A stretch of DNA of 64,000 bases, taken from the NCBI RefSeq assembly GCF_003918875.1, contig NW_025767302.1, positions 1,922,001-1,986,000 on the forward strand, given 5' to 3'. Below are positions 1 to 11,395 of this stretch, one piece after another. A program made the translations under genes and the position numbers. A model generated the notes under the pieces. It was not told the origin of the DNA, did not search any database, and worked only from the letters and a program-made list of their open reading frames with translations. The stretch comes from Haliotis rubra. Taxonomy: Eukaryota. The number at the start of each line of letters is the position of its first letter. The stretch's first letter is position 1.

Positions 1-654
1 TGTTGCATGACACCAACTCATTTGGGATATTATAACTATAATTTAGATAAAAGATGCCTATGACGTACATAATGGTATTATTTAAAAACTTTTTATTTAT
101 GTTTGGATTATGCTCACAAATATTCTGGCATTCCAACACAATGATCGTGTTGTCGGATCAGTTTGACTGTGCAGTTTAAAAGTTTGAGACAGCATTTAAA
201 ACTGATCTGTATTTGAAAGGATACATACGAAAAACTTTATCCATTACTCTGCCTAAGCAGTTAAGCACACTGAATATATCCCAGGAACATCAATGATTTT
301 TCCCGCTGAGACAAGGCGTTTGATCCGATCTTTATTGGTAGATGCGTTAAAGCATGCAGCATACAGGTCAAATGAACGCCTGAAAAGTTTGATGGTAAGA
401 CTCATGGATGACCCTGGCCACTTATGGAGTGTTGAGTTTTAGCTGTAACAGGTGGATCTGATTTACCCTGGTTTTAATCTGACACTCGGGACGGCTATTT
501 GCATACAGAGATAGGTTTTGAGTCAGAGCTAGAGGAAATACACAAAGGAAAGACTTGAACCGTATGGAAGTAGTGTAGGATGAGTCAGAGTGAACCTTCT
601 AACGTGATCTTCTTCAGCACAAGACGGTTTGTACTCTACTCTTACCATTGACAC

Positions 655-835
655 TGCCGCCTTGTATTTCTTCCATCCCTTGTAGGCAGCTCTGTGGTTT
701 CGTTCACAATTACAACATTTGGATATTGTTTCTGCACCAGTTTCTATTTGGTCATTCTCTGCATAGGGATTACAGGCTTTAAGTTTTACATCGAGTTACC
801 ACATGGCACACAATGCATGGAAACAGAGGCCACCT
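655..835 (-). mobile_element. Decayed non-LTR retrotransposon ORF1 (gag-like zinc knuckle) fragment
   Basis: The minus strand translates to ...ISKCCNCERNHRAAYKGWKKYK, matching the C-x-N-C-x3-H-x-A-x-Y-x-G-C knuckle of I/Jockey-type ORF1, with degenerate knuckles upstream (CHVVTRCK). There is no intact ORF. Confidence 0.45.
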
Positions 836-1367
836 GATTGCGAGAAGTCTGTGCGAAAGAATGACCAAAAATAACTGTATGAACAAGTATTTCAAAGTAC
901 TTTACTATGACTAACCTTATCGATAATAAAACCAGCTTATTCGACAATTAATATCAAATATCACACCCTGTACTAAAACTACGTTGTACAAGCTTGAAGA
1001 AGCCCAGCATCTAGGGCATCTCTTCTAGTGGATTCAATAGAAAAAGAGTCATTATTTTCTTCGTCCGGCAGTTAAGATGTTACCTTTTCAGCAGATTGTG
1101 TGAATGACGGGTGCTACCGGAAACACCGGATATGCTTACCCTTCTGAGCGGACACTTGGAACCATCACTGCTTTTCAGTGGTCCATTCATGTGGTTCTCA
1201 CGGCTATTTTGACACTGGTTGGGATCTGTTTTTGAGGATAGTCAAGAATGGGTAAATGACGTTATATATACGCTTTTAACTTTCTTATCTATTTATAGGA
1301 GATGCAGAATTATTTAGTCACCTAAACCTTTTTGGAAACGGATGATGATTAAAGGGGGGTTGCACGT

Positions 1368-1669
1368 CAGTGTAATTAGTGTCCTGTGTGACACTGTGCC
1401 ACTCTGTCAGTATAATTAGTGTCCTGTGTGACACTGCCACTGTGTCAGTATAATTAGTGTCCTGTGAGACACTGCCACTGTGTCAGTATAATTAGTGTCC
1501 TGTGAGACACTACCACTGTGTCAGTATAATTAGTGTCCTGTGTGACACTACCACTGTGTCAGTATAATTAGTGTCCTGTGTGACACTGCCACTGTGTCAG
1601 TATAATTAGTGTCCTGTGTGACACTGCCACTGTGTCAGTATAATTAGTGTCCTGTGACACTGCCACTGT
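1368..1669. repeat. 38-bp minisatellite, left part
   Basis: Tandem copies of GTATAATTAGTGTCCTGTGTGACACTGCCACTGTGTCA. Each unit contains a TGACAC-7nt-GTGTCA inverted repeat. Confidence 0.95.
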
Positions 1670-2669
1670 TGCTGCGGCACCATCAGAACATAGTGGGCTG
1701 CCATTTCGCCGACCGGGCGACATTAAAGAACCATGACGCTTTTTCTTCGTATATGGTATGCCATGGGCGCTGCGCCATATCATGGTGTACTCGTGGGCGC
1801 AGCAATCATCAAAATGATGGTATTAACAATGCGGCATGTCCGGGTGGTATTACCATGGAGCGCTTTTCATCTTCGCGGTGGTATTATTCGAACGCAGGGG
1901 CGTATATTGGGCATAGCGAACGATAAGGTATGGGCCGTATACGGAACTTACGCTGTAATGAACATAATTGAACTTTCGAACGCTGGTGGCGATGAGCAAG
2001 TTGGTACTTTCCGTTTTGAACGCGCCCTTTGTAGTATTAAATGCCTCATTATTATTAATGACGCTTTCGCCGCCAGAACCATAATTGGTAATGCGCTTTA
2101 ACGCTCGTATCAGCGAAAACCAGGTAATGCGGAACGCTGCTTTCCAGCATCGTGGATATTACCGGAACGCAGCTGTGTCAAAGATGCCGTTAGCGTGTTT
2201 CAGCTGAACGCGCCGCTTCATGTCGAACTCATCGATGTAAAGGCGTATGTGGCGGTATCGTGGACGGGCTATTACCATGGAACGCTGGCACATATTCGAA
2301 CCGCATTATTTCATGTCCATGGAAGTGATGCGTACTTACGTGGCGGGCGCATATAACGGTAAAAAGAGTATGCGCCAGGCCGATGCGCATCATCGATGCG
2401 ATGATTAACGCTATCATATGACCGATATTATGGGCGCCGCGCATCAATGGTATGGTGGTAAATGCGGGCGCGTTTAATGGTATAACAAATTGAATGATGC
2501 GGCAATATCAGAGCGCCGATTGGTGCTTTCCGTATTGCTCCATTAATTAATCGCTTATAATTAATACCCTGGTTGAGCCCGCTACCATAATTAATCAAAG
2601 GTATAATTAGTGTTCTATGGCCAGCCCGCACCGCCACTGTATCAATTATAAATTAGATTAATCCTATTG
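1670..2669. other. Anomalous 1000-nt CpG-rich block interrupting the minisatellite (probable sequencing/assembly artefact or synthetic sequence)
   Basis: The repeat breaks at 1670 and resumes at 2670. The block is CpG-rich, has no recognisable protein, shows ACGC at about 38-nt spacing, and degraded repeat units reappear at 2601-2669. Confidence 0.65.
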
Positions 2670-3066
2670 AATTAGTGTCCTGTGTGACACTGCCACTGTG
2701 TCAGTATAATTAGTGCCCTGTGTGACACTGCCACTGTGTCAGTATAATTAGTGTCCTGTGTGACACTGCCACTGTGTCAGTATAATTAGTGTCCTGTGTG
2801 ACACTGCCACTGTGTCAGTATAATTAGTGTCCTGTGTGACACTGCCACTGTGTCAGTATAATTAGTGTCCTGTGTGACACTGCCACTGTGTCAGTATAAT
2901 TAGTGTCCTGTGTGACACTGCCACGGTGTCAGTATAATTAGTGTCCTGTGTGACACTGCTACTGTGTCAGTATAATTAGTGTCCTGTGTGACACTGCTGC
3001 TGTGTCAGTATAATTAGTGTCCTGTGTGACACTGTCACTGTGTACTGTCACTGTGAGTGTGATTAG
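2670..3066. repeat. 38-bp minisatellite, right part
   Basis: About 10 near-perfect copies of the same 38-mer. Confidence 0.95.
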
Positions 3067-3156
3067 TTTCCTGTGTATGAGTTGAGCAGGTGACATGTTA
3101 AAGCATAACCTTTTGCCACCGATAATAATACATGATTTCCGAAAGTCGCCAACAAT

Positions 3157-3173
3157 TTTATTTACATTTTATT
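3157..3173 (-). terminator. Candidate polyadenylation signals of the GH86-like gene
   Basis: Two AATAAA hexamers on the minus strand (3168-3173 and 3157-3162), 50-70 nt downstream of the stop codon. Confidence 0.5.
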
Positions 3174-3224
3174 GAAACTCATTCATCATGGGCTGAAATC
3201 AGTTATTATGGCATCCAAGGGAGT

Positions 3225-4699
3225 TCATTGGCCTTTCCTCAGGGATAAAGCAATTGCAGCAACCCGGCCTTGGTCCTGAGCAAAGCGCATCTGAACAGCA
3301 TTGGCGTTTTGCTTGAGGATGGTCGGTGGAACATTATATTCTATTGTTGCCCAGAGATTGTCGGTGTCGTTGTTGCTTGGGTTGTGGAGAATGTAGTACG
3401 AGTGGAGATTTACTCCATTCATAGTTACAGAAACTGGAATATACTTGGCAGAATGATCAACGAAACTTACTGAAATGCGGAGTTTTGCTACCATAATGTG
3501 ATGAAGATCACTGCTGTGGAGCATGATGTTCATGTGAGCTGCTTTCCTGTTTATTATAACCAACATGTCGTCTCCATAATGCACACTTTCATAGACCAAG
3601 GGAACATGAGAAAATGTGTGACCTGTGGGAAACTGAAAGAAGCATGAAGATTCTGGAGGGACAGTCACCTGATTTCCATTGACATGAATAGGTACTTGCT
3701 TATCCAGTTGAGTGGCCCTCCTGTTATTGAGGTACAGACAGGTTGATGTCCCGTGGGTCAACCTTACCCATCCTTTGTCAAAAGCCAGTGTGACCTTAGC
3801 TTGGGCTGTGTCATAGTTGTGTAGCAGAACGGTTAGCATTTTGGAACTTGGTTCCACAAGGGCATGACTCTGTATCTGCCTCTCTGCCTGGTGGAACTGA
3901 CTCTCGGATCTGAGGAACTTCATACTGCTGGTGATGTTGTCCCACAGGTGGAAGGCCAGAGCTATGTCTCTCTCGTTTTTATTCTTGTCCAGGATACTGT
4001 AGTTGATGCTTTCTTGGCCTTGCCTGTTGCTGTAACTAAGAAGGAAGGACACAGCCCTGTCCACCACGTACCGAAGCTCAAGAAAGGTGAATATATTCGA
4101 GTTGTGAAGGTTGATGTAAGCCCAGTCCAAGAGGGTCGATGGTTTCTGGACATCGATGCCTGTGACCGTTGCTAGACCATGAGCGGAGAATATGATTGGA
4201 ACATCTTTTCCAGTCATCATATTAGCATATGTTTCCACAATGTCCACCGTCCCAACTAGCCTAGCCTCATTTGGGCCATAAAACCGATATCTGTTCCCCT
4301 GGACGACAAAGTGATTGAAAGGATGGAATGAAAAGAAGTCCAATAGGCCAAGGGACATGTTCATGAATTGCGTCATCCAGCTCCATTGACGAAAGTTCTG
4401 TTTATCAAAATAGGTTATTCCACCAGTAAAGGCAGGCCCGCCTATCTTTATTTGGGGATATATGGCTTTCACCTTCTTGGCCACAAGCTCGAATACAGTC
4501 ACTACGGTTGTCCAATTGACATCCAACTTCCACAGTGTGTTTGGCTCATTGATTGGTTCAAAATATGGAGGGACTGCGCCGTTAGAACCGTTGTATATTG
4601 CCTGGACGTGTAGAGATATGGTTTCCGCAGCAGCATCAAGATTGCTTGGAAAGTGACCCTTATGTGCAGATTTGTCCATCCAGTGAGGCCATAAGTTAC
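3225..4699 (-). CDS. GH86 beta-porphyranase/beta-agarase-like glycoside hydrolase, exon 3 (catalytic barrel and C-terminal beta-sandwich domains)
   Basis: Motifs YFEPINEP (acid/base NE), KIGG, LDFFSFHP, D-x-VE-x-Y, and a C-terminal LRIS..V.MNG..IE..N.V...F...GRV pattern resemble Bacteroidetes beta-porphyranase A. The AG acceptor at 4701-4700 is phase 1 and in frame with exon 2. The joined CDS is 1842 nt, 613 aa. Confidence 0.85.
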
Positions 4700-7028
4700 C
4701 TTTGGCAGGAAAACATGATTATGTAAAGAAATTCATTCCCTGAGATACTGATGTTTTGTTGATACCTCACAGGCGCGAGCTTTTTATATGTTATGACAGT
4801 AAATTAACTGTTTATATAATTTCACCACACGTTCTTCTTACCGAGTCACTTTCTCAGTTCGATACTTAAAAGCAATTTATTTAGCGTTGTCACAGACAAA
4901 ACTCAATGTCTTGTTTTATTGACACCTGTGTGTCTGCCTGCCTGTCTGCTAATGACAATATTTAATACACAACTGCGATCACTGACCTCATGCAATTTGA
5001 ACTTAACACCAATCAGGCTATACACCATAAACAAAATGCATTGATTTATGGCCCGAGTTCGGTCTCTGTCACATTATGTAATTACACAGACAGGCAGGTG
5101 TGATAGTTGAACACTTGACATGTTATGATGTCTATTGATTGCAAAATGTTATACACAAAAAATGAGCATGTATTTACAAAACCCAACATCTCTACATATA
5201 CACACACAATAAGCCGTGAGGGCGTACGCAAATGAACCAGCCGTTACACTTGAGTGCACACCCACCCGCTCTGACTGTGTTCGGTATCCCGGCTGCTTCG
5301 TTTCTTGGGAAGTAAACCGAGGTACACAATATTGCACTTTTGATTTGCGATTGTACGCTTATAATTTTGTTTATATGTTTTTTCATAACCAGCAATGTAT
5401 ATTATATGTCACGAATAAGTGATAATTGTGTTTTTAATTATGTTTGATTTTTTGGTTGCATGTGACCTTTAATGAAAGTTAGTGTTATGTGCATTTTAGC
5501 CAGATTTATACAAAATATTCCTGAATACAAAACAAATGTATATTACATCAGGCCATAAATCTTGTCACATTGTAACATCTTTAGATTTTCAACAGAAATA
5601 TATCTTTCTCACTGTCAACTATCCATAATTATTTGTGCCACTATAAGTATCTCCTTTTCAAACTTGCTTCTTATTCGCCGGCCAGAAAACCTCACATTTT
5701 GGACAAGAATGAAACTTAAATGCTTTCCCTCAGGCTGCAGAGCGTTAACGGGCTTGTCTGTTACGCACTGTCCGTTCTGTCCAAGTGTACTCAGTTTAGA
5801 TTATCAAATTATGTTCAGCCATCATGACACCTGAGGATGTTGAAGTATCAGGTGTTTGGATGGAAAGAATTTGAACGATGAAAGAAAAGTTACCACGTCC
5901 GTCTTGGAATCGTTCAGCATACAGTATCCATGAATGCCCCTTGTAGGATTCATTGTAGATGAAGATTTACAAGCTTGTCAGATCACCAAATACAAACATA
6001 CCGAGTCCCTTGGGTTGGCAGTGCCACTTGGGTCTGACAAATCATCATGATATTATTTCACAAGAGGAATATCCAAATACCTAGCTAAACTCCAGTTTCC
6101 ATGCAAATGGACCAGGTAGGACTAATGCATGATTGGTTCAGTCGCACCATCCAGATGTAGTAGATACTTACTGCCTAAAAGATCAGACCAAAAGGATGAT
6201 GATAAGCCAGACTGCAGCACCTCATTTGTTCAATGACTCTCTTGGGAAGGTTTTGGAAGAGTACACTTGGGCACGACGGACAGCTTTAATCATGCTATCA
6301 TCTTGGTAGCCAGATGCCAGAACGTACCAGCCCCTAACGATACATTCTAGCACTGACCTAAAGGAAGTTTTATGTTGCCAGAAGTATATAACAGTTGTTA
6401 TCATTGTTCGTATAACATCAGAAATAGTAACCCACTTATATGCCCCTTAAGTCAAAGTTAAACACCTGTCAGTAATTAAGGAACAGGTGGGTTTTTAGGT
6501 CAGATTATAAGTCAGTAATCCAACTCATCTACGGGTATTCTGCATCAAGCTGTAGATGTTGGAAAGAAGTGTGGTTTAGCCCATGCCCAAGTGGCTTTGG
6601 ATGAGATATGCTATCAGTGGCTCTAGTAAATACTGATTGTTTACACTGAAAATTACTTTTTGTAAAAGAATTTATAGTGCAGCACGTTTGAAATAGAGAC
6701 AAAATTTTGTTTAAGTAATTAGCAATGATAACTATTGTTTTATATTCCCATGTTTGATAAGGGGATTCATGAACCTATCTTTACGTTCATGGTCAGAATT
6801 GTGTAACCTCCTTATGTCATAAAGCTTTTGTCTCGTTAACTTGCATCATATTAGAAAAAAGCAAAGTTATACCTCTTAGTAGTAAATAAGTGAATACCTT
6901 TCTAAGATCTCAGGTTCTCAAGAATTACACCCATTTTGGGTTCACAGAGGAAAATTAGATGTGGAAGCCAAAAAAAAATCAGAAACATTTTGTAAAAGCA
7001 ATGAGATATGTAAGCTTCCTTAACCCAC

Positions 7029-7170
7029 CTTTCAGTTCAAGCATGATTGGTCTCTGTTTTCCATATCTATTCAGATTGTCGAGATATTTCTCAACTAAAT
7101 TGTGTTGAAGCTGCTTGTTTTGGAAGAACGCTGGATTCGGGTACCCTTTTCGGTGTGGATCTTCTGTCAC
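7029..7170 (-). CDS. GH86-like gene exon 2
   Basis: tttcgcatag|GTG ACA GAA...CTG AAA G|gtgggt, 142 nt. Phase 0 in and phase 1 out match both neighbouring exons (VTEDPHRKGYPNP...MLELK). Confidence 0.8.
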
Positions 7171-7345
7171 CTATGCGAAATGCCAACATTAACACAGTTT
7201 ATATACATGATACTGGGAAACTACATTGAAATAACAAAAGTGTAGATTCAGTGTATGACTACGCTAATTGATAGAAAGAACATTTCCGTTTTGAAATGTA
7301 AATTTACCAGGCCGAAAAATCACTGTCATTACGGTTTCTTATCAC

Positions 7346-7861
7346 AGTGAGTGAGTTTTTAGTTTTACTCCGAAGTGTTTAGCAATGTTCCAGCAATATC
7401 ATATATATTGTGTGTGGCCCTGTGCATAGAGCTCAGGTCACAAATCAGGTGAAGTTATGCAACGTTGAGATGGGTGGCGGTGTTTGGCAGTTTGGCTCCT
7501 GAGAGTTTCTGGGACTTAAGTCCCCACAACGAAGCATATGTGATACATGTGGCCTCACCTTAGGCAAATGAGTTTGTTGCCTAAGTTCACCCAGCAGAAA
7601 ATGGGTACCCGGTGGACTATTAACCTTCTAGCGCCTCACAGACAGCTTGAGTTAGCCGGCGTAATCATATCAATCAGATTGTTAACGCTATGAGCATTCA
7701 CCTAGTGAATGGAGTTTAGCGCATTATAAATACACTTAATATTATTATCACGGCGGGGGACACCAGACATGGGCTTCACACATTCTACCCATGTGGGGAA
7801 TTGAACCCGGGTCTTCGGCGTGACGGGCTAACGCTTTAACCACTAAGCTACCCCGCTGCCC
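7346..7861 (-). mobile_element. tRNA-derived SINE with (TCAC)n tail, split by a nested insertion
   Basis: The tail half (7346-7401) and head half (7746-7861) together rebuild the family seen intact at 17222-17386, including A/B-box-like motifs. Confidence 0.8.
7402..7750 (+). mobile_element. Nested SINE with 5S-rRNA-like segment, Deu/Nin-like core and L2-type tail
   Basis: GAAGTTATGCAACGTTGAG..ATGGGTG resembles molluscan 5S rRNA. It has a CACCCAGCAGAAAATGGGTACC core and an AGCGCATTATAAAT..(ATT)n tail, and is flanked by a TATCA duplication. Confidence 0.55.
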
Positions 7862-7910
7862 TGTCTTATCTCAGGGTGAATACTACCATGGTATGGCTGA
7901 AGACACGTAC

Positions 7911-8135
7911 CTTGTCAAAATAGCTTAAATCTGAATTCAGCCATCTTCCAGTGCGGGCTCCCGTTTTTTTCATGCTGTCTATAGTGCTGGGATTATCCAG
8001 GCCCATTTTACCATTCCACCTGTCAGGGTCGAAGTTGGTTCTTCCTCGCTGTACCAAATACTCTGGGTAAATGGTCACTGTATACCCTCTGACACAAGGA
8101 AGGGTACAGAGAGCGAGCACAATGGGTAGCAACAT
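7911..8135 (-). CDS. GH86-like gene exon 1 with signal peptide
   Basis: ATG followed by a hydrophobic signal peptide MLLPIVLALCTLPCVRG|YTV. 225 nt, ending GAC AAG|gtacgt. A TATA-like TTATAGAA lies about 55 nt upstream. Confidence 0.85.
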
Positions 8136-8449
8136 GTCGTCTAGCTGGTAGTTCTATCTTCTGTCAGTAGCTCGTTATGTCTGGGTTCTATAAGGAAGGC
8201 GTTCTGTCCCACTTGGTTTTATTTGCATTGTCACGATAAGATATTAACTTAGATATGCAACTGCATTACAGACTAGCATTCTATGGGCTTGTCAAAGCCA
8301 TATGGTTCCTCACAAAGTGTGTTGTCGTTCCAGCATTGAAAAAAAGCGACAAGACCATTGTTCATAATCAGAGTGAGTGAGTATAGTTTTACGCCGCACT
8401 CTACGGATGCCTATTAGGGCCACGCTACGCTATTATTCAGCGTCTTTTA

Positions 8450-8790
8450 TGTTGAAAATTCAACTCACTATCTTGAAAATTCAACTTGCTATCTTGAAAA
8501 TTCAACTTTCTATGTTAAAAATTCAACTTAGCATCTTGAAAATTCAACTTAGTGTGTTGAACATTCATACGGAAGCCTTTTAGGGCCATGCGTTTTTTTA
8601 ATTTTTTATTGAAATTTCAAGATACTAAGTTGAAATTTCAAGATACTTAGTTGAAATTTCAAGATGCTAAGTTGAAATTTCAAGATGAATAAGTTGAAAT
8701 TTCAAGATAAGTAAGTTGAAATTTCAAGATAATGTGTTTTACCATGCGACATGAAAATATATTTGAAATTAATCATCTTGAAATTTCAAG
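8450..8790. repeat. Subterminal ~21-bp tandem repeats with palindromic TTGAAATTTCAA core
   Basis: Repeated TTGAAAATTCAACT (8450-8560) and TTGAAATTTCAAGA (8608-8790). Confidence 0.85.
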
Positions 8791-8846
8791 ACCATGCGAA
8801 TCATGTGGTAGCTCAGCATTTGGGGAATGTCTCTTCGATAGGAAGG

Positions 8847-11395
8847 ATGGCTAGTCCAGGCAGATCTGAAACTACAGATGCTACTCGCGCAGATGCAGTG
8901 AACATAAGTTTCTCTTTCTCATAAATTTCAGTGACAAGATCGGTTCCCAACATGCATAAATACAGGACAAGATACATGTTAAATACAGGTTTTCCTTTAG
9001 CAGTATTTGACTTTAGAATAAGACGGTAGCCTTATATTCTTTTTGCAGTTAGAACCGTGTTTGCAATTCATTTCCTAAGTACCGGCACGTATCATAATTT
9101 AACAGATATATGTGAGTGTTTAGCCCAGGACGTATAAAGGCGGTATAGAGTTTATTATGATCGTCCCGTCTAAGCAAACCGGTTTGCCACAAGCCCATGT
9201 TAAAGCATTTAGGAAACAACTCATCTAACTATGCCAAAGTGGGCTTTGTTTTAAATAATAACGTCATGACAACTTGTATTTCTCATATCTTGAGCAGGCT
9301 TTTTTATGCCGTCCAAGTGTGAAATATATCGAACCAATTGAACATATGTGACATACGTCTGGCAAAATAGAACCAGACGAGGTGATTGTTATCGCATGGC
9401 CGACTTTGGTATCACTCTAGTAATAAAACATTCATGAATACAATCAATAATTAGCCTTGTATGCACAATGAGAAACGACGTCATTGAATCCAATTTTACC
9501 ATTACAATTCAGGCTGTTTTCATGGGTCACATAAACTTTCAGTGTTTAATCTAAATTGTCTTTTCAGATTGAACAAGCAGAGATGGCTTCTCAGAAGAAA
9601 ATTTCCAAATGGAAGCAGAGTTTATTTGATCGTCTGCGCATCAAACTGAACCGACCATCGACAAGTGACGACCTAACAGATATAGGTCCACAAAGTCGAA
9701 ATGCTGTCAAACTGACAAAACAGGTGGAGACTGGGCTTATGAAATTCGACGAAAAGAAAATGATGTATACTCAAGTCCGAACTAAATCAGGAGGTGGTAC
9801 TCGGAATATATCGGTTCTGAAACAGTCAACTAGTTCAAGCTAAGAAGATCTTATTCGCAGAGGGACATTCCATAAAATTTGGACCCGAAACTGATTATGA
9901 GTTCAATGTCATGGACTATCAGTTTGTCATTCTGAATGAGGATGTCACTGTTCAGGATATGTCTGATCTTACTCGACTGACCAACCTGAGGTTTTATTTG
10001 GCGATGAAGAAGGTACAAGACACCACCACCAAAGATCCTGTTCCTGGTCATTGTGCCCAGAGTACCCATTCAAGACCGCAAACTTGGGGAGAAGCTGATC
10101 AAGATCAACCAGGACAACAAACGTTGGAACAAGGTCAACAGCATCAGCCACCAGGTCAACAGCATCAGCCACCGTGCTGGAATTCTAAACCACAGAATCA
10201 GGGGGATCAGCAGGATCATCAGGCACAAGCTGCAGGAAACACAGATGACCACAGTGATGATAACGATGAGTTACCAAATATCCTGCCTCTACATTCTGAG
10301 GTTGAACCATATTCAGTTGATATTGATCTCCTGGACAACTTCATTGCAGATCTTGAACACCAGACAGCACAAGCCAATGTCAGCCCCCATACCATACGTA
10401 TACACAGAGGACATGTCTTCCAGGAACTCAAAGAAAAATTCAAAGAAAAAACTTTCAATCAAAATAAGGATATTTTCAATTTCCAAATGATTTTGCCAAA
10501 TGGAGAAGTAGAGGTTGCCGAAGACATGCGAGATGCTTTAGTAGAGTTCTAGGATTCTTTCTTTGAACAGTGTTGTGTGGAAAGAGCTTGTAAGGTGCCA
10601 TTTATAAGGCATGATTATGACAGTGATGAATGGCTGGCATTTGCTTCCATTCTCTATTTCGGATGGAAGTGGCAGAACTACTTCCCCGTGAGCATAGCAA
10701 AGTCTTTTATGGCGTGTTGCATTTATGGCATGGATATATTTTCAACAACAGAAGAATCCCTTATACCGGAATACCTTTCCTTCCTTCCATGTTCAGAGGC
10801 TGGCATACTCAAGGCGTCCTTGGAAGGTGATTTTGTGGAGGAGGACGTTATTGATGTCCTCAGTGTCCATGAATGTAGAGGTCTGTCCACAAAAGAAACT
10901 CTCAAGAGGTTGATTGGCGAGATAGCTCACAAGGAGATGGTTCAGCAGCCAATGTATGTAAAGGGAGCATGGTTCGATAAACTGACTTTGTTGGGGTTCA
11001 GTCGTGGAGGAACATCTCTTGATTCACTGTATGACTCCCTCAGGCCAAACAATCGGAAAGTGATGAAGATGCTCTCATTTCCAGACGACATGTCCTTGCA
11101 ACAGAAAAGTACATCGGAGCTCCTCAGAAAATATGTCCGTGAACTGGAGAAAGATTATCTCGCCCGGTTTCTCAGGTTCTGCACTGGAGCCAACTTGTGT
11201 ATCACAGATGGTTATGGTCACCCAAAGCCAATCTACATTCGTTTCACAACACTATCAGGTCTGGCAAGGAGGCCAGTTGCTCACACTTGTGGACAAGTAC
11301 GTGAGCTGCCTGACCAATACGACAACTTCCTTGACTTCGTGAAGGAGTTCAACACGATCCTCGAGAGCGGTGTGTGGGTGATGGATTTTGTTTAG
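8847..11395 (+). pseudogene. G2E3-like HECT E3 ubiquitin ligase pseudogene (transposon cargo)
   Basis: HECT C-lobe FLRFCTGAN...RRPVAHTCG..LP..Y, plus IHRGHVFQEL and KVPFIRHD. Disabled by TAA at 9841-9843, a frameshift before 9911, TAG at 10550-10552 (EF*, normally W), and an apparently mutated donor (AAC|ataagt at 8904) after a putative first exon 8847-8903. Acceptor at 9567. Confidence 0.8.

What the first reader, a model, noticed from the sequence alone, without database searches (positions are those of the whole stretch)
3225..8135. Intron-containing, secreted GH86 porphyranase/agarase-like gene in an animal genome
Seen: three phase-consistent exons give a 613-aa protein with a signal peptide, a clan GH-A barrel (EPINEP, KIGG, DFFSFH) and a C-terminal beta-sandwich. 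The gene is embedded among animal SINEs, so it is not bacterial contamination. Established: GH86 enzymes that degrade red-algal porphyran/agarose are characterised from marine and gut bacteria such as Bacteroides plebeius. Inference: an endogenous, possibly horizontally acquired and intronised seaweed-digestion gene in an algivorous mollusc.
Basis: partly seen in the sequence, partly recalled or inferred. Interest (0 to 1): 0.8.

Follow-up and report, generated by a model that had tools for sequence, protein, structure and literature searches.

The report
Abalone GH86-like gene lacking its nucleophile
The blacklip abalone's own genome carries a three-exon gene for a secreted protein built like bacterial enzymes that cut red-seaweed agar and porphyran. 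This copy has lost the key catalytic residue yet is kept by selection, so it more likely binds the sugar chain than cuts it.

Summary
Window 3225-8135 (minus strand) carries a three-exon, GT-AG, phase-consistent gene for a 613-aa secreted protein. It is identical to RefSeq XP_046545280.1 of Haliotis rubra.

Sequence, Pfam and fold all place it with family GH86; the seven best PDB fold matches are all GH86 structures (TM 0.72-0.82).

It is endogenous:
- The introns hold high-copy host repeats.
- The exons sit at single-copy depth.
- Neighbours are IAP genes, also beside the H. asinina orthologue.

The family is old in molluscs. Both intron positions and phases are shared by abalone, mussel, pearl oyster and chiton. 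Any transfer therefore predates crown molluscs. The nearest tree neighbours are three protist-dataset sequences, not a bacterial clade.

The "seaweed-digestion" reading is weak for this copy. The catalytic nucleophile Glu is Ala295, and the conserved beta-6 Tyr is Phe250. The 11 sequences with this pair form one abalone clade; 81 other mollusc sequences keep Tyr and Glu. Selection is still strong (dN/dS 0.11, against 0.12 for an intact paralogue).

Best reading: a non-hydrolytic galactan-binding pseudoenzyme.

No RNA evidence was obtained and no activity has been tested. The scan had already found this family on other pieces of this genome (s1-320397, s1-335030, s1-335031).

The parts
7911..8135 (-). 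Exon 1 (codons 1-75), starting at the ATG at 8135. Followed by a GT donor at 7910-7909.
   Evidence: same junction (..YFDK|VTEDP..) as the RefSeq models P0001 and P0052
8085..8135 (-). Signal-peptide-like N-terminus, MLLPIVLALCTLPCVRG (residues 1-17).
   Evidence: Read from the sequence. Low-confidence helix 2-11, then the first strand from residue 17 in the AF2 model. No signal-peptide predictor was available.
7171..7910 (-). Intron 1 (phase 0, GT..AG). Holds a high-copy host repeat with a SINE-like head at 7746-7861.
   Evidence: depth up to about 2e6 against about 15-30; 4 further copies in the window
7029..7170 (-). Exon 2 (142 nt, codons 76-122 plus the first base of Gly123).
4700..7028 (-). 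Intron 2 (phase 1, GT..AG). Holds a high-copy repeat at about 4666-5535.
3225..4699 (-). Exon 3 (rest of Gly123 to Gln613, plus stop TGA at 3227-3225). Encodes most of the (beta/alpha)8 barrel and both beta-sandwich domains.
4545..4547 (-). Codon GAG = Glu174, the acid/base position of the conserved NEP motif. Retained.
   Evidence: E in 41/41 Glu-type mollusc and 13/13 bacterial sequences
4317..4319 (-). Codon TTC = Phe250, where all other mollusc and bacterial GH86 sequences examined have Tyr (FSFHxY).
4182..4184 (-). Codon GCT = Ala295, at the catalytic nucleophile position. This is the Glu mutated in BuGH86 E322Q (5ta0).
   Evidence: (query FSAHG aligned to 5ta1 ISEYS / 5ta0 ISQYS)
3243..3491 (-). 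C-terminal beta-sandwich domain, Pfam BPA_C (residues 526-608).
   Evidence: 33.6-34.6 bits against a 26.2 cut-off
3157..3173 (-). Two AATAAA polyadenylation hexamers, 52-68 nt downstream of the stop codon.
   Evidence: Read from the sequence. Usage not tested.

Best explanation
This is an endogenous Haliotis rubra gene (LOC124255410) for a secreted protein of three domains with the GH86 fold. It belongs to a mollusc-wide, intron-bearing GH86-like family that is greatly multiplied in abalone. It sits in a two-copy tandem beside IAP genes.

This copy belongs to an abalone-specific clade. In that clade's ancestor the catalytic nucleophile Glu became Ala (A295) and the conserved beta-6 Tyr became Phe (F250). 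The acid/base Glu174, other conserved barrel residues and both beta-sandwich domains were kept.

A retaining GH-A glycosidase cannot form its glycosyl-enzyme intermediate without the nucleophile. The protein is therefore most likely not a hydrolase. It is more likely a neofunctionalised pseudoenzyme that still binds a red-algal-type galactan chain in the old active-site cleft, acting in a lectin-like, carrier or sensor role.

Shown here: gene structure, endogeny, GH86 homology and fold, loss of the nucleophile, a single origin of that loss, and purifying selection.

Inferred: loss of hydrolysis, glycan binding, and the physiological role.
For: Gene and endogeny: (IAP neighbour in both H. rubra and H. 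asinina).

GH86 homology:
- The single sequence hits BuGH86 (5ta1) at 1e-10 and beta-agarase 8h97 at 6e-10.
- The family profile scores 2e-40, 1e-38 and 3e-27 against 5ta1, 8h97 and 4aw7, across residues 71-608.
- Foldseek's top 7 matches are all GH86 structures, TM 0.72-0.82. The next family scores TM 0.40.
- Pfam BPA_C passes its cut-off.

Nucleophile loss:
- Ala aligns to the Glu that differs between 5ta1 and the E322Q entry 5ta0.
- That column is E in 41/41 Glu-type molluscs and 13/13 bacteria, and A in 11/11 members of the clade.
- F250 co-occurs with A295 without exception: 11 sequences have F+A and 81 have Y+E.
- The 11 form one clade (SH-aLRT 99). It has two subclades, each with H. rubra, H. 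rufescens and H. asinina members.

Selection (exon 3):
- dN/dS is 0.11 against the H. asinina orthologue (dS 0.34).
- It is 0.22-0.23 against the tandem copy and against H. rufescens.
- An intact (Glu-type) orthologue pair of the same two species gives 0.12.

Retained conserved residues: R64, E170, N173, E174, W228, D243, H248 and W375.
Against: - No binding or activity data exist.
- No transcript evidence was obtained. The presumed RNA runs covered only intron repeats, and the exact protein is on record only from the genome assembly.
- The fold model is of the 95%-identical tandem paralogue P0001, not of this protein. I could not measure distances in it, so a substitute nucleophile elsewhere in the cleft is not excluded.
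- Phe at the beta-6 Tyr position also occurs in two protist relatives that keep the Glu. Y250F alone is therefore not evidence of inactivity.
- The acid/base Glu is still under constraint, which would also fit a residual or altered catalytic role.
- Which of the retained residues contact substrate was not checked against a solved complex.
Confidence: 0.58

Rival explanations
1. One reading: a working digestive beta-porphyranase/agarase secreted into the gut, cutting red-algal galactans by some catalytic solution that does not need Glu295. Candidates are another carboxylate, His296, an exogenous nucleophile, or substrate assistance.
For: - Full-length GH86 fold, and the acid/base Glu174 is retained.
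- Purifying selection is as strong as on an intact paralogue.
- Abalone eat red algae (PMC5870069).
Against: - The nucleophile Glu is invariant in the 41 Glu-type mollusc and 13 bacterial sequences aligned, and all 81 motif-scanned Glu-type mollusc sequences keep Tyr+Glu. It is the residue disabled in the BuGH86 E322Q entry 5ta0.
- No new Asp, Glu or Cys shared by the whole Ala clade was found at barrel positions.
- Further universally conserved residues are changed in this subclade: H192F and D236N.
Confidence: 0.2
2. A GH86-derived pseudoenzyme with a role unrelated to feeding. One option is an innate-immune pattern-recognition protein, as GH16-derived glucan-binding proteins are in arthropods. 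Another is a modulator or inhibitor of the active paralogues.
For: - The same evidence for loss of catalysis plus constraint applies.
- The gene lies in a cluster of IAP (BIR+RING) genes in two species. That placement is only circumstantial.
Against: Nothing here shows tissue, inducibility or ligand. Neighbouring genes need not share a function.
Confidence: 0.15
3. A decaying or unexpressed gene copy: an incipient pseudogene after loss of the catalytic residue.
For: - No RNA evidence.
- H. rufescens has a broken third copy beside two intact ones (L081:3-2756).
- One H. rubra relative (P0003) has an aberrant C-terminus.
Against: - The 613-codon frame is intact, with canonical splice sites.
- dN/dS is 0.11-0.23.
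- The Ala state is shared by 11 intact sequences in two subclades and three species.
Confidence: 0.05
4. Bacterial contamination, or a recent bacterial-to-abalone transfer.
For: Solved and characterised GH86 enzymes are bacterial.
Against: - Two spliceosomal-type introns hold host repeats, at host single-copy depth.
- The contig is 2.9 Mb, with animal neighbours.
- The introns are conserved across three mollusc classes.
- Identity to bacterial proteins is at most 24% over the full length.
Confidence: 0.01

Closest known systems
Bacterial GH86 beta-agarases and beta-porphyranases (BuGH86 5ta1/5ta0/5ta5, Aga86A_Wa 8h97, BpGH86A 4aw7)
   Same: - Three-domain architecture: a (beta/alpha)8 barrel plus two beta-sandwich domains. 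TM is 0.72-0.82 over the whole length.
- Profile E-values run from 2e-40 to 3e-27.
- The NEP acid/base motif, the DFFSFH beta-6 motif and the BPA_C domain are shared.
   Different: - Only about 16-24% identical.
- Encoded in an animal genome, with two introns and a eukaryote-type signal peptide.
- The nucleophile Glu is Ala and the beta-6 Tyr is Phe.
Glu-type 'beta-porphyranase A-like' paralogues of Haliotis, Mytilus, Pinctada and Liolophura (RefSeq automatic names)
   Same: - Same three-exon structure and intron phases.
- 34-46% identity, and the same length and domains.
- One monophyletic mollusc clade.
   Different: Those keep Tyr250 and Glu295 (81 of the 92 sequences in which both motifs could be read). 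They are therefore the plausible enzymes. This copy and 10 relatives do not keep them.
Glycoside-hydrolase-derived pseudoenzymes: GH18 chi-lectins (for example CHI3L1/YKL-40, insect IDGFs) and GH16-derived beta-1,3-glucan recognition proteins (GNBP/betaGRP). Named from general knowledge, not tested here.
   Same: A secreted animal protein that keeps the whole fold of a glycosidase family, has lost a catalytic carboxylate, and is retained under purifying selection.
   Different: - A different GH family and clan.
- Here the nucleophile is lost, rather than the acid.
- Ligand binding has not been shown for this protein.
Endogenous algal-polysaccharide enzymes of abalone already described, for example the host-encoded alginate lyase (PMC6181387)
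   Same: A host-genome-encoded, secreted CAZyme-type protein in an algivorous gastropod.
   Different: - Those are active and target brown-algal polymers.
- No paper in the searched library reports an animal GH86.
- Genomes of abalone-gut bacteria were found to carry red-algal polysaccharide enzymes including GH86 (PMC5870069).

Membership tests
CAZy family GH86 | Significant sequence similarity of the catalytic module to characterised GH86 enzymes, and better than to other clan GH-A families. | tested here: met
   - 5ta1 at 1.2e-10 and 8h97 at 6e-10, against GH39 at 6e-4 or weaker.
- profile scores 2e-40, 1e-38 and 3e-27 against GH86, and 5e-5 against GH39.
- A dbCAN GH86 HMM was not available.
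CAZy family GH86 | A (beta/alpha)8 barrel followed by two beta-sandwich domains, as in BpGH86A and BuGH86. | tested here: met
   - AF2 model of the 95%-identical paralogue, pLDDT 81, pTM 0.82.
- all seven top matches are GH86 structures, TM 0.72-0.82.
- Pfam BPA_C is above its cut-off.
- Porphyrn_cat_1 is below its cut-off in this protein (15.1 against 27) but above it in the chiton paralogue P0038.
CAZy family GH86 | Catalytic acid/base Glu in the N-E-P motif (beta-4). | tested here: met
   Glu174, codon 4547-4545.
CAZy family GH86 | Catalytic nucleophile Glu (beta-7, S-E-[YF]-G). This is the Glu replaced in BuGH86 E322Q. | tested here: not met
   Ala295, codon GCT at 4184-4182.
CAZy family GH86 | Endo-hydrolysis of agarose, porphyran or funoran. 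| not testable with these tools
   Needs recombinant protein and substrates.
Glycosidase-derived pseudoenzyme / lectin | Descent from an active GH lineage, with loss of a catalytic residue at a single point in the tree. | tested here: met
   the 11 Ala-type sequences need one change (SH-aLRT 99). They are sister to a Glu-type Haliotis clade.
Glycosidase-derived pseudoenzyme / lectin | Retention under purifying selection after the loss. | tested here: met
   dN/dS is 0.11-0.31 within the clade, against 0.12 for an intact paralogue pair of the same two species.
Glycosidase-derived pseudoenzyme / lectin | Binds its glycan without cleaving it. | not testable with these tools
   Inferred only from retained conserved barrel residues.
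Horizontally acquired animal CAZyme gene | Patchy distribution: absent from other animal phyla. | tested here: met
   - among 1.84 billion representatives there were 661 hits. The high-scoring group is Haliotis and Mytilus only.
- Pinctada and the chiton Liolophura also carry the family.
- the only eukaryote cluster found is Mollusca.
- Absence rests on what the collections hold.
Horizontally acquired animal CAZyme gene | The animal clade is nested inside a donor (bacterial) clade. | tested here: inconclusive
   - molluscs are monophyletic (100).
- They group (99 SH-aLRT, LG+C20 model) with three long-branch sequences from protist data sets: Bolivina argentea, a Picozoa single-cell assembly, and an unnamed EukProt entry.
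- The tree is unrooted, and long-branch attraction is not excluded.
Horizontally acquired animal CAZyme gene | Integration into the host genome. | tested here: met

The most novel reading that the evidence does not exclude
Molluscs carry an ancient, eukaryote-type branch of GH86, shared with foraminifera and Picozoa rather than recently taken from bacteria. Abalone have expanded it into dozens of genes that let the animal itself attack red-algal galactans. From this digestive family a clade of catalytically dead, strongly conserved GH86 'lectins' arose, of which this gene is one. That would be the first animal galactan-recognition proteins derived from an agarase/porphyranase fold.
Probability: 0.3. 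Interest if true: 0.8.

Novelty: new variant of a known kind. Interest (0 to 1): 0.6.

Why it matters
The one abalone microbiome study read here (PMC5870069) found red-algal polysaccharide enzymes, GH86 among them, in genomes of gut-associated bacteria. No paper in the searched library reports an animal GH86.

A large host-encoded GH86 family would change how algal digestion in marine grazers is partitioned between host and microbiome. That is relevant to abalone aquaculture feeds.

This locus adds a second layer. It is a natural nucleophile-less GH86 kept under strong constraint. It offers a ready-made test of how glycosidases turn into carbohydrate-binding proteins, and a possible natural agar/porphyran-binding reagent.

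The conserved introns across three mollusc classes also date the family to before crown molluscs. That makes it a useful case for the debate on ancient transfer versus vertical descent of animal CAZymes.

Tried and rejected
1. RNA evidence. The look-up of sequencing runs found no run on record as RNA. The three small runs guessed to be RNA laid only on intron repeats, with nothing on the exons. This is uninformative and is not evidence of silence.
2. Transcript contigs. An exact-protein look-up for P0052 found only the genome assembly.
3. tRNA-derived SINE head. ARAGORN called no tRNA in 3000-8400. The repeat is called SINE-like only from its copy number and dispersed copies.
4. Further copies. 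tblastn with the whole family found none in the window. The tandem paralogue lies 791 nt before the window start.
5. GH39 or GH5 membership. Rejected, because these are only sub-threshold or marginal Pfam hits and far weaker PDB hits.
6. NCBIfam gave no hit.
7. A compensating catalytic residue shared by the Ala clade. None was evident from the alignment. No 3-D distances could be computed.
8. The 1000-nt odd block at 1670-2669, as a sign of bacterial DNA beside the gene. It has no match in E. coli genomes and was not pursued.
9. Two rows that involve P0002 picked up the broken H. rufescens copy and are disregarded. One search gives the correct H. rufescens values.
10. One literature search was badly framed and yielded nothing usable.
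Full report
**1. What is there**

On the minus strand of window 3225-8135 there are three open segments that join cleanly.
- Exon 1 is 8135-7911, from ATG to ..GACAAG|gtacgt.
- Exon 2 is 7170-7029, from ..catag|GTGACA.. to ..CTGAAAG|gtgggt.
- Exon 3 is 4699-3225, from ..ccaaag|GTAACT.. to TGA.
- The intron phases are 0 and 1. The CDS is 1842 nt and gives 613 aa with no internal stop.

The spliced product is identical to RefSeq XP_046545280.1, "uncharacterized protein LOC124255410 [Haliotis rubra]" (P0052). Window 1-9210 is 100% identical to H. rubra assembly GCA_003918875.1, contig QXJH01000060.1. The organism is therefore the blacklip abalone.

Two AATAAA hexamers lie 52-68 nt past the stop codon.

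The N-terminus, MLLPIVLALCTLPCVRG|YTV, reads as a signal peptide. No predictor was available. The AF2 model begins its first strand at residue 17.

**2. It is the animal's own gene**

- A genomic run covers the exons and the unique intron sequence at depth 15-31. Intron stretches 4666-5535 and 7276-7971 reach 1e4 to 2e6, so they are dispersed host repeats.
- The 116-nt head of the intron-1 repeat has four more copies in the window.
- A 95%-identical tandem paralogue (P0001) lies 791 nt before the window start, followed by a BIR+RING (IAP) gene.
- The H. asinina orthologue (P0053) also sits beside an IAP gene.
- H. rufescens has two intact tandem copies and a broken third.

Contamination is excluded.

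**3. Family**

- Pfam finds BPA_C, the "beta porphyranase A C-terminal" domain, above its cut-off. GH39, GH5 and Porphyrn_cat_1 appear only below threshold.
- Against PDB sequences, exon 3 alone hits the GH86 agarase BuGH86 (5ta1, 1.2e-10) and Aga86A_Wa (8h97, 6e-10). GH39 xylosidases score 6e-4 or weaker.
- A profile of 18 mollusc family members hits 5ta1 at 2e-40, 8h97 at 1e-38 and the porphyranase BpGH86A (4aw7) at 3e-27, over residues 71-608. GH39 scores 5e-5.
- An AF2 model of the tandem paralogue has pLDDT 81 and pTM 0.82. Foldseek places it with the GH86 structures: the seven best matches are all GH86, with TM 0.72-0.82 and E from 1e-39 to 1e-34. The next family (GH30) reaches TM 0.40.

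**4. The twist: the nucleophile is gone**

In the HMMER alignment, the only residue that differs between wild-type BuGH86 (5ta1) and the E322Q entry (5ta0) is the Glu of ..ISEYS... The window protein aligns ..FSAHG.. to it.

Across 65 aligned sequences, that column is Glu in all 41 Glu-type molluscs and all 13 bacteria. It is Ala in 11 abalone sequences, including this one.

The same 11 sequences, and only they, have Phe in place of the otherwise invariant Tyr of FSFHxY. In a motif scan of 101 mollusc sequences, 81 had Y+E, 11 had F+A, and 9 were fragments or motif variants.

This subclade additionally changes two universally conserved residues, H192F and D236N. It keeps R64, E170, N173, the acid/base E174, W228, D243, H248 and W375. 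No new acidic residue shared by the clade was found.

In the tree the 11 sequences form a single clade (SH-aLRT 99), sister to a Glu-type Haliotis clade. They split into two subclades, each holding H. rubra, H. rufescens and H. asinina members. The change therefore happened once, before these species diverged.

**5. It is maintained, not decaying**

Nei-Gojobori estimates on exon 3:

| Comparison | dN | dS | dN/dS |
|---|---|---|---|
| Window gene vs H. asinina orthologue | 0.039 | 0.342 | 0.11 |
| Window gene vs its tandem copy | – | – | 0.22 |
| Window gene vs H. rufescens | – | – | 0.23 |
| Intact pair P0022/P0023 (same two species) | 0.042 | 0.346 | 0.12 |

The nucleophile-less protein is as constrained as a presumably active paralogue.

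**6. Mechanism proposed**

GH86 enzymes are retaining clan GH-A glycosidases that work through a Glu nucleophile and a Glu acid/base. This is established knowledge, and the BuGH86 E322Q complex, 5ta0, is listed. Without the nucleophile the covalent intermediate cannot form.

The most likely state is therefore a secreted, non-hydrolytic protein that still docks a galactan chain in the conserved cleft. This would be a pseudoenzyme analogous to GH18 chi-lectins or GH16-derived glucan-recognition proteins. That analogy comes from general knowledge and was not tested here.

Loss of hydrolysis and glycan binding are inferences. A residual or alternative catalytic mechanism is the main rival.

**7. 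Age and origin**

The exact-match exon maps show the same two introns in all of these:
- several Haliotis paralogues;
- the mussel Mytilus californianus;
- the pearl oyster Pinctada imbricata;
- the chiton Liolophura sinensis.

Intron 1 is phase 0, immediately before x-P-[EQ]-D-P. Intron 2 is phase 1, inside the Gly codon of ..E[LI]KG. The intron-bearing gene therefore predates the split of chitons from gastropods and bivalves.

Distribution:
- A full HMM scan of 1.84 billion representatives found 661 relatives. The top-scoring group is Haliotis and Mytilus only, followed by a sharp drop from 233 to 201 bits and below.
- Word-based searches add Pinctada and Liolophura, and show dozens of Haliotis paralogues.
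- The ESM Atlas shows one eukaryote cluster (Mollusca), then bacterial agarase clusters.
- Named bacterial relatives are only 20-24% identical over the full length. They include Flammeovirga, Marinoscillum, Fulvivirga, Reichenbachiella agariperforans and Tamlana.

In a tree with 48 further representatives, molluscs are monophyletic (100). They group (99 SH-aLRT, LG+C20 model) with three long-branch sequences from protist data sets:
- the foraminiferan Bolivina argentea;
- a Picozoa single-cell assembly;
- an unnamed EukProt transcript.

The Bolivina sequence and the unnamed EukProt transcript share the N-terminal motifs of the mollusc proteins at 26-27% identity.

"Acquired from bacteria and intronised" is thus possible only as an ancient event, and it is not demonstrated. 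A eukaryote-type GH86 branch is an equally open reading. Long-branch attraction and contamination of the protist data sets are not excluded.

**8. Literature**

No paper in the searched library reports GH86 in an animal.
- PMC5870069 found red-algal polysaccharide enzymes, including GH86, in genomes of abalone gut-associated bacteria.
- PMC6181387 shows that host-encoded alginate lyase is expressed in abalone viscera.

RefSeq's automatic names ("beta-porphyranase A-like", "beta-agarase-like", "funoran endo-beta-hydrolase-like") already flag the paralogues. This gene itself is listed as "uncharacterized".

**9. Earlier notes of this scan**

The family was already found on three other pieces of this genome, with follow-ups reaching the same family-level conclusion (s1-320397, s1-335030, s1-335031). 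I verified these points independently.

New here:
- the single origin of the change;
- the co-varying Y250F;
- the dN/dS comparison;
- the intron conservation across three mollusc classes;
- the protist neighbours.

**10. Limits**

- There is no expression evidence.
- The structural model is of the paralogue, and its coordinates could not be inspected.
- dN/dS comes from pairwise counts on exon 3 only.
- The trees are quick searches with SH-aLRT support only.
- The taxonomic range depends on what the collections hold.

**Verdict**

Endogeny is confirmed. Horizontal origin is unresolved and, if real, ancient. The digestive-enzyme role is unlikely for this particular copy, which is best read as a conserved GH86-derived pseudoenzyme.

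Noticed in passing
window 1670-2669: An exactly 1000-nt block of unrelated, more G+C-rich sequence interrupts a 38-nt minisatellite (1366-1669 and 2670-3043) just downstream of the gene. It is present as such in the public assembly, because window 1-9210 equals the contig. It has no match in E. coli genomes. It may be an assembly or gap-filling artefact. Already noted as s1-323660.
   Followed up: partly
L082:10001-12698 (791 nt before the window start) and L082:15780-19036: A tandem paralogue P0001 lies here: 95% identical, introns much shorter (gene span 2.7 kb against 4.9 kb), also Ala295/Phe250. It is followed by a BIR+RING IAP gene. The same GH86-IAP adjacency occurs in H. asinina (L089).
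   Followed up: yes
L081:3-2756 (H. rufescens): A third, broken copy of the Ala-type gene sits upstream of two intact tandem copies. tblastn shows overlapping, frame-shifted pieces and a missing middle part.
   Followed up: partly
P0065, P0082, P0248 (EukProt entries): GH86-like proteins in protist data sets: an unnamed transcriptome, the foraminiferan Bolivina argentea, and Picozoa sp. COSAG02. P0065 and P0082 share the mollusc-type N-terminal motifs (RW.GH, RWLN.DLN, PQD.N.GY.D). Those two have Phe at the beta-6 Tyr position but keep the nucleophile Glu.
   Followed up: partly
window 8444-8731: Two adjacent 21-nt tandem arrays in opposite orientation (TTGAAAATTCAA-type units) lie about 300-600 nt upstream of the gene's start codon.
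   Followed up: no
P0062 and P0064 (Mytilus edulis, M. coruscus): Gene models that fuse a GH86-like piece to a DDE transposase or a sulfotransferase (CHST1) annotation. They are probably mis-merged predictions next to GH86 genes.
   Followed up: no
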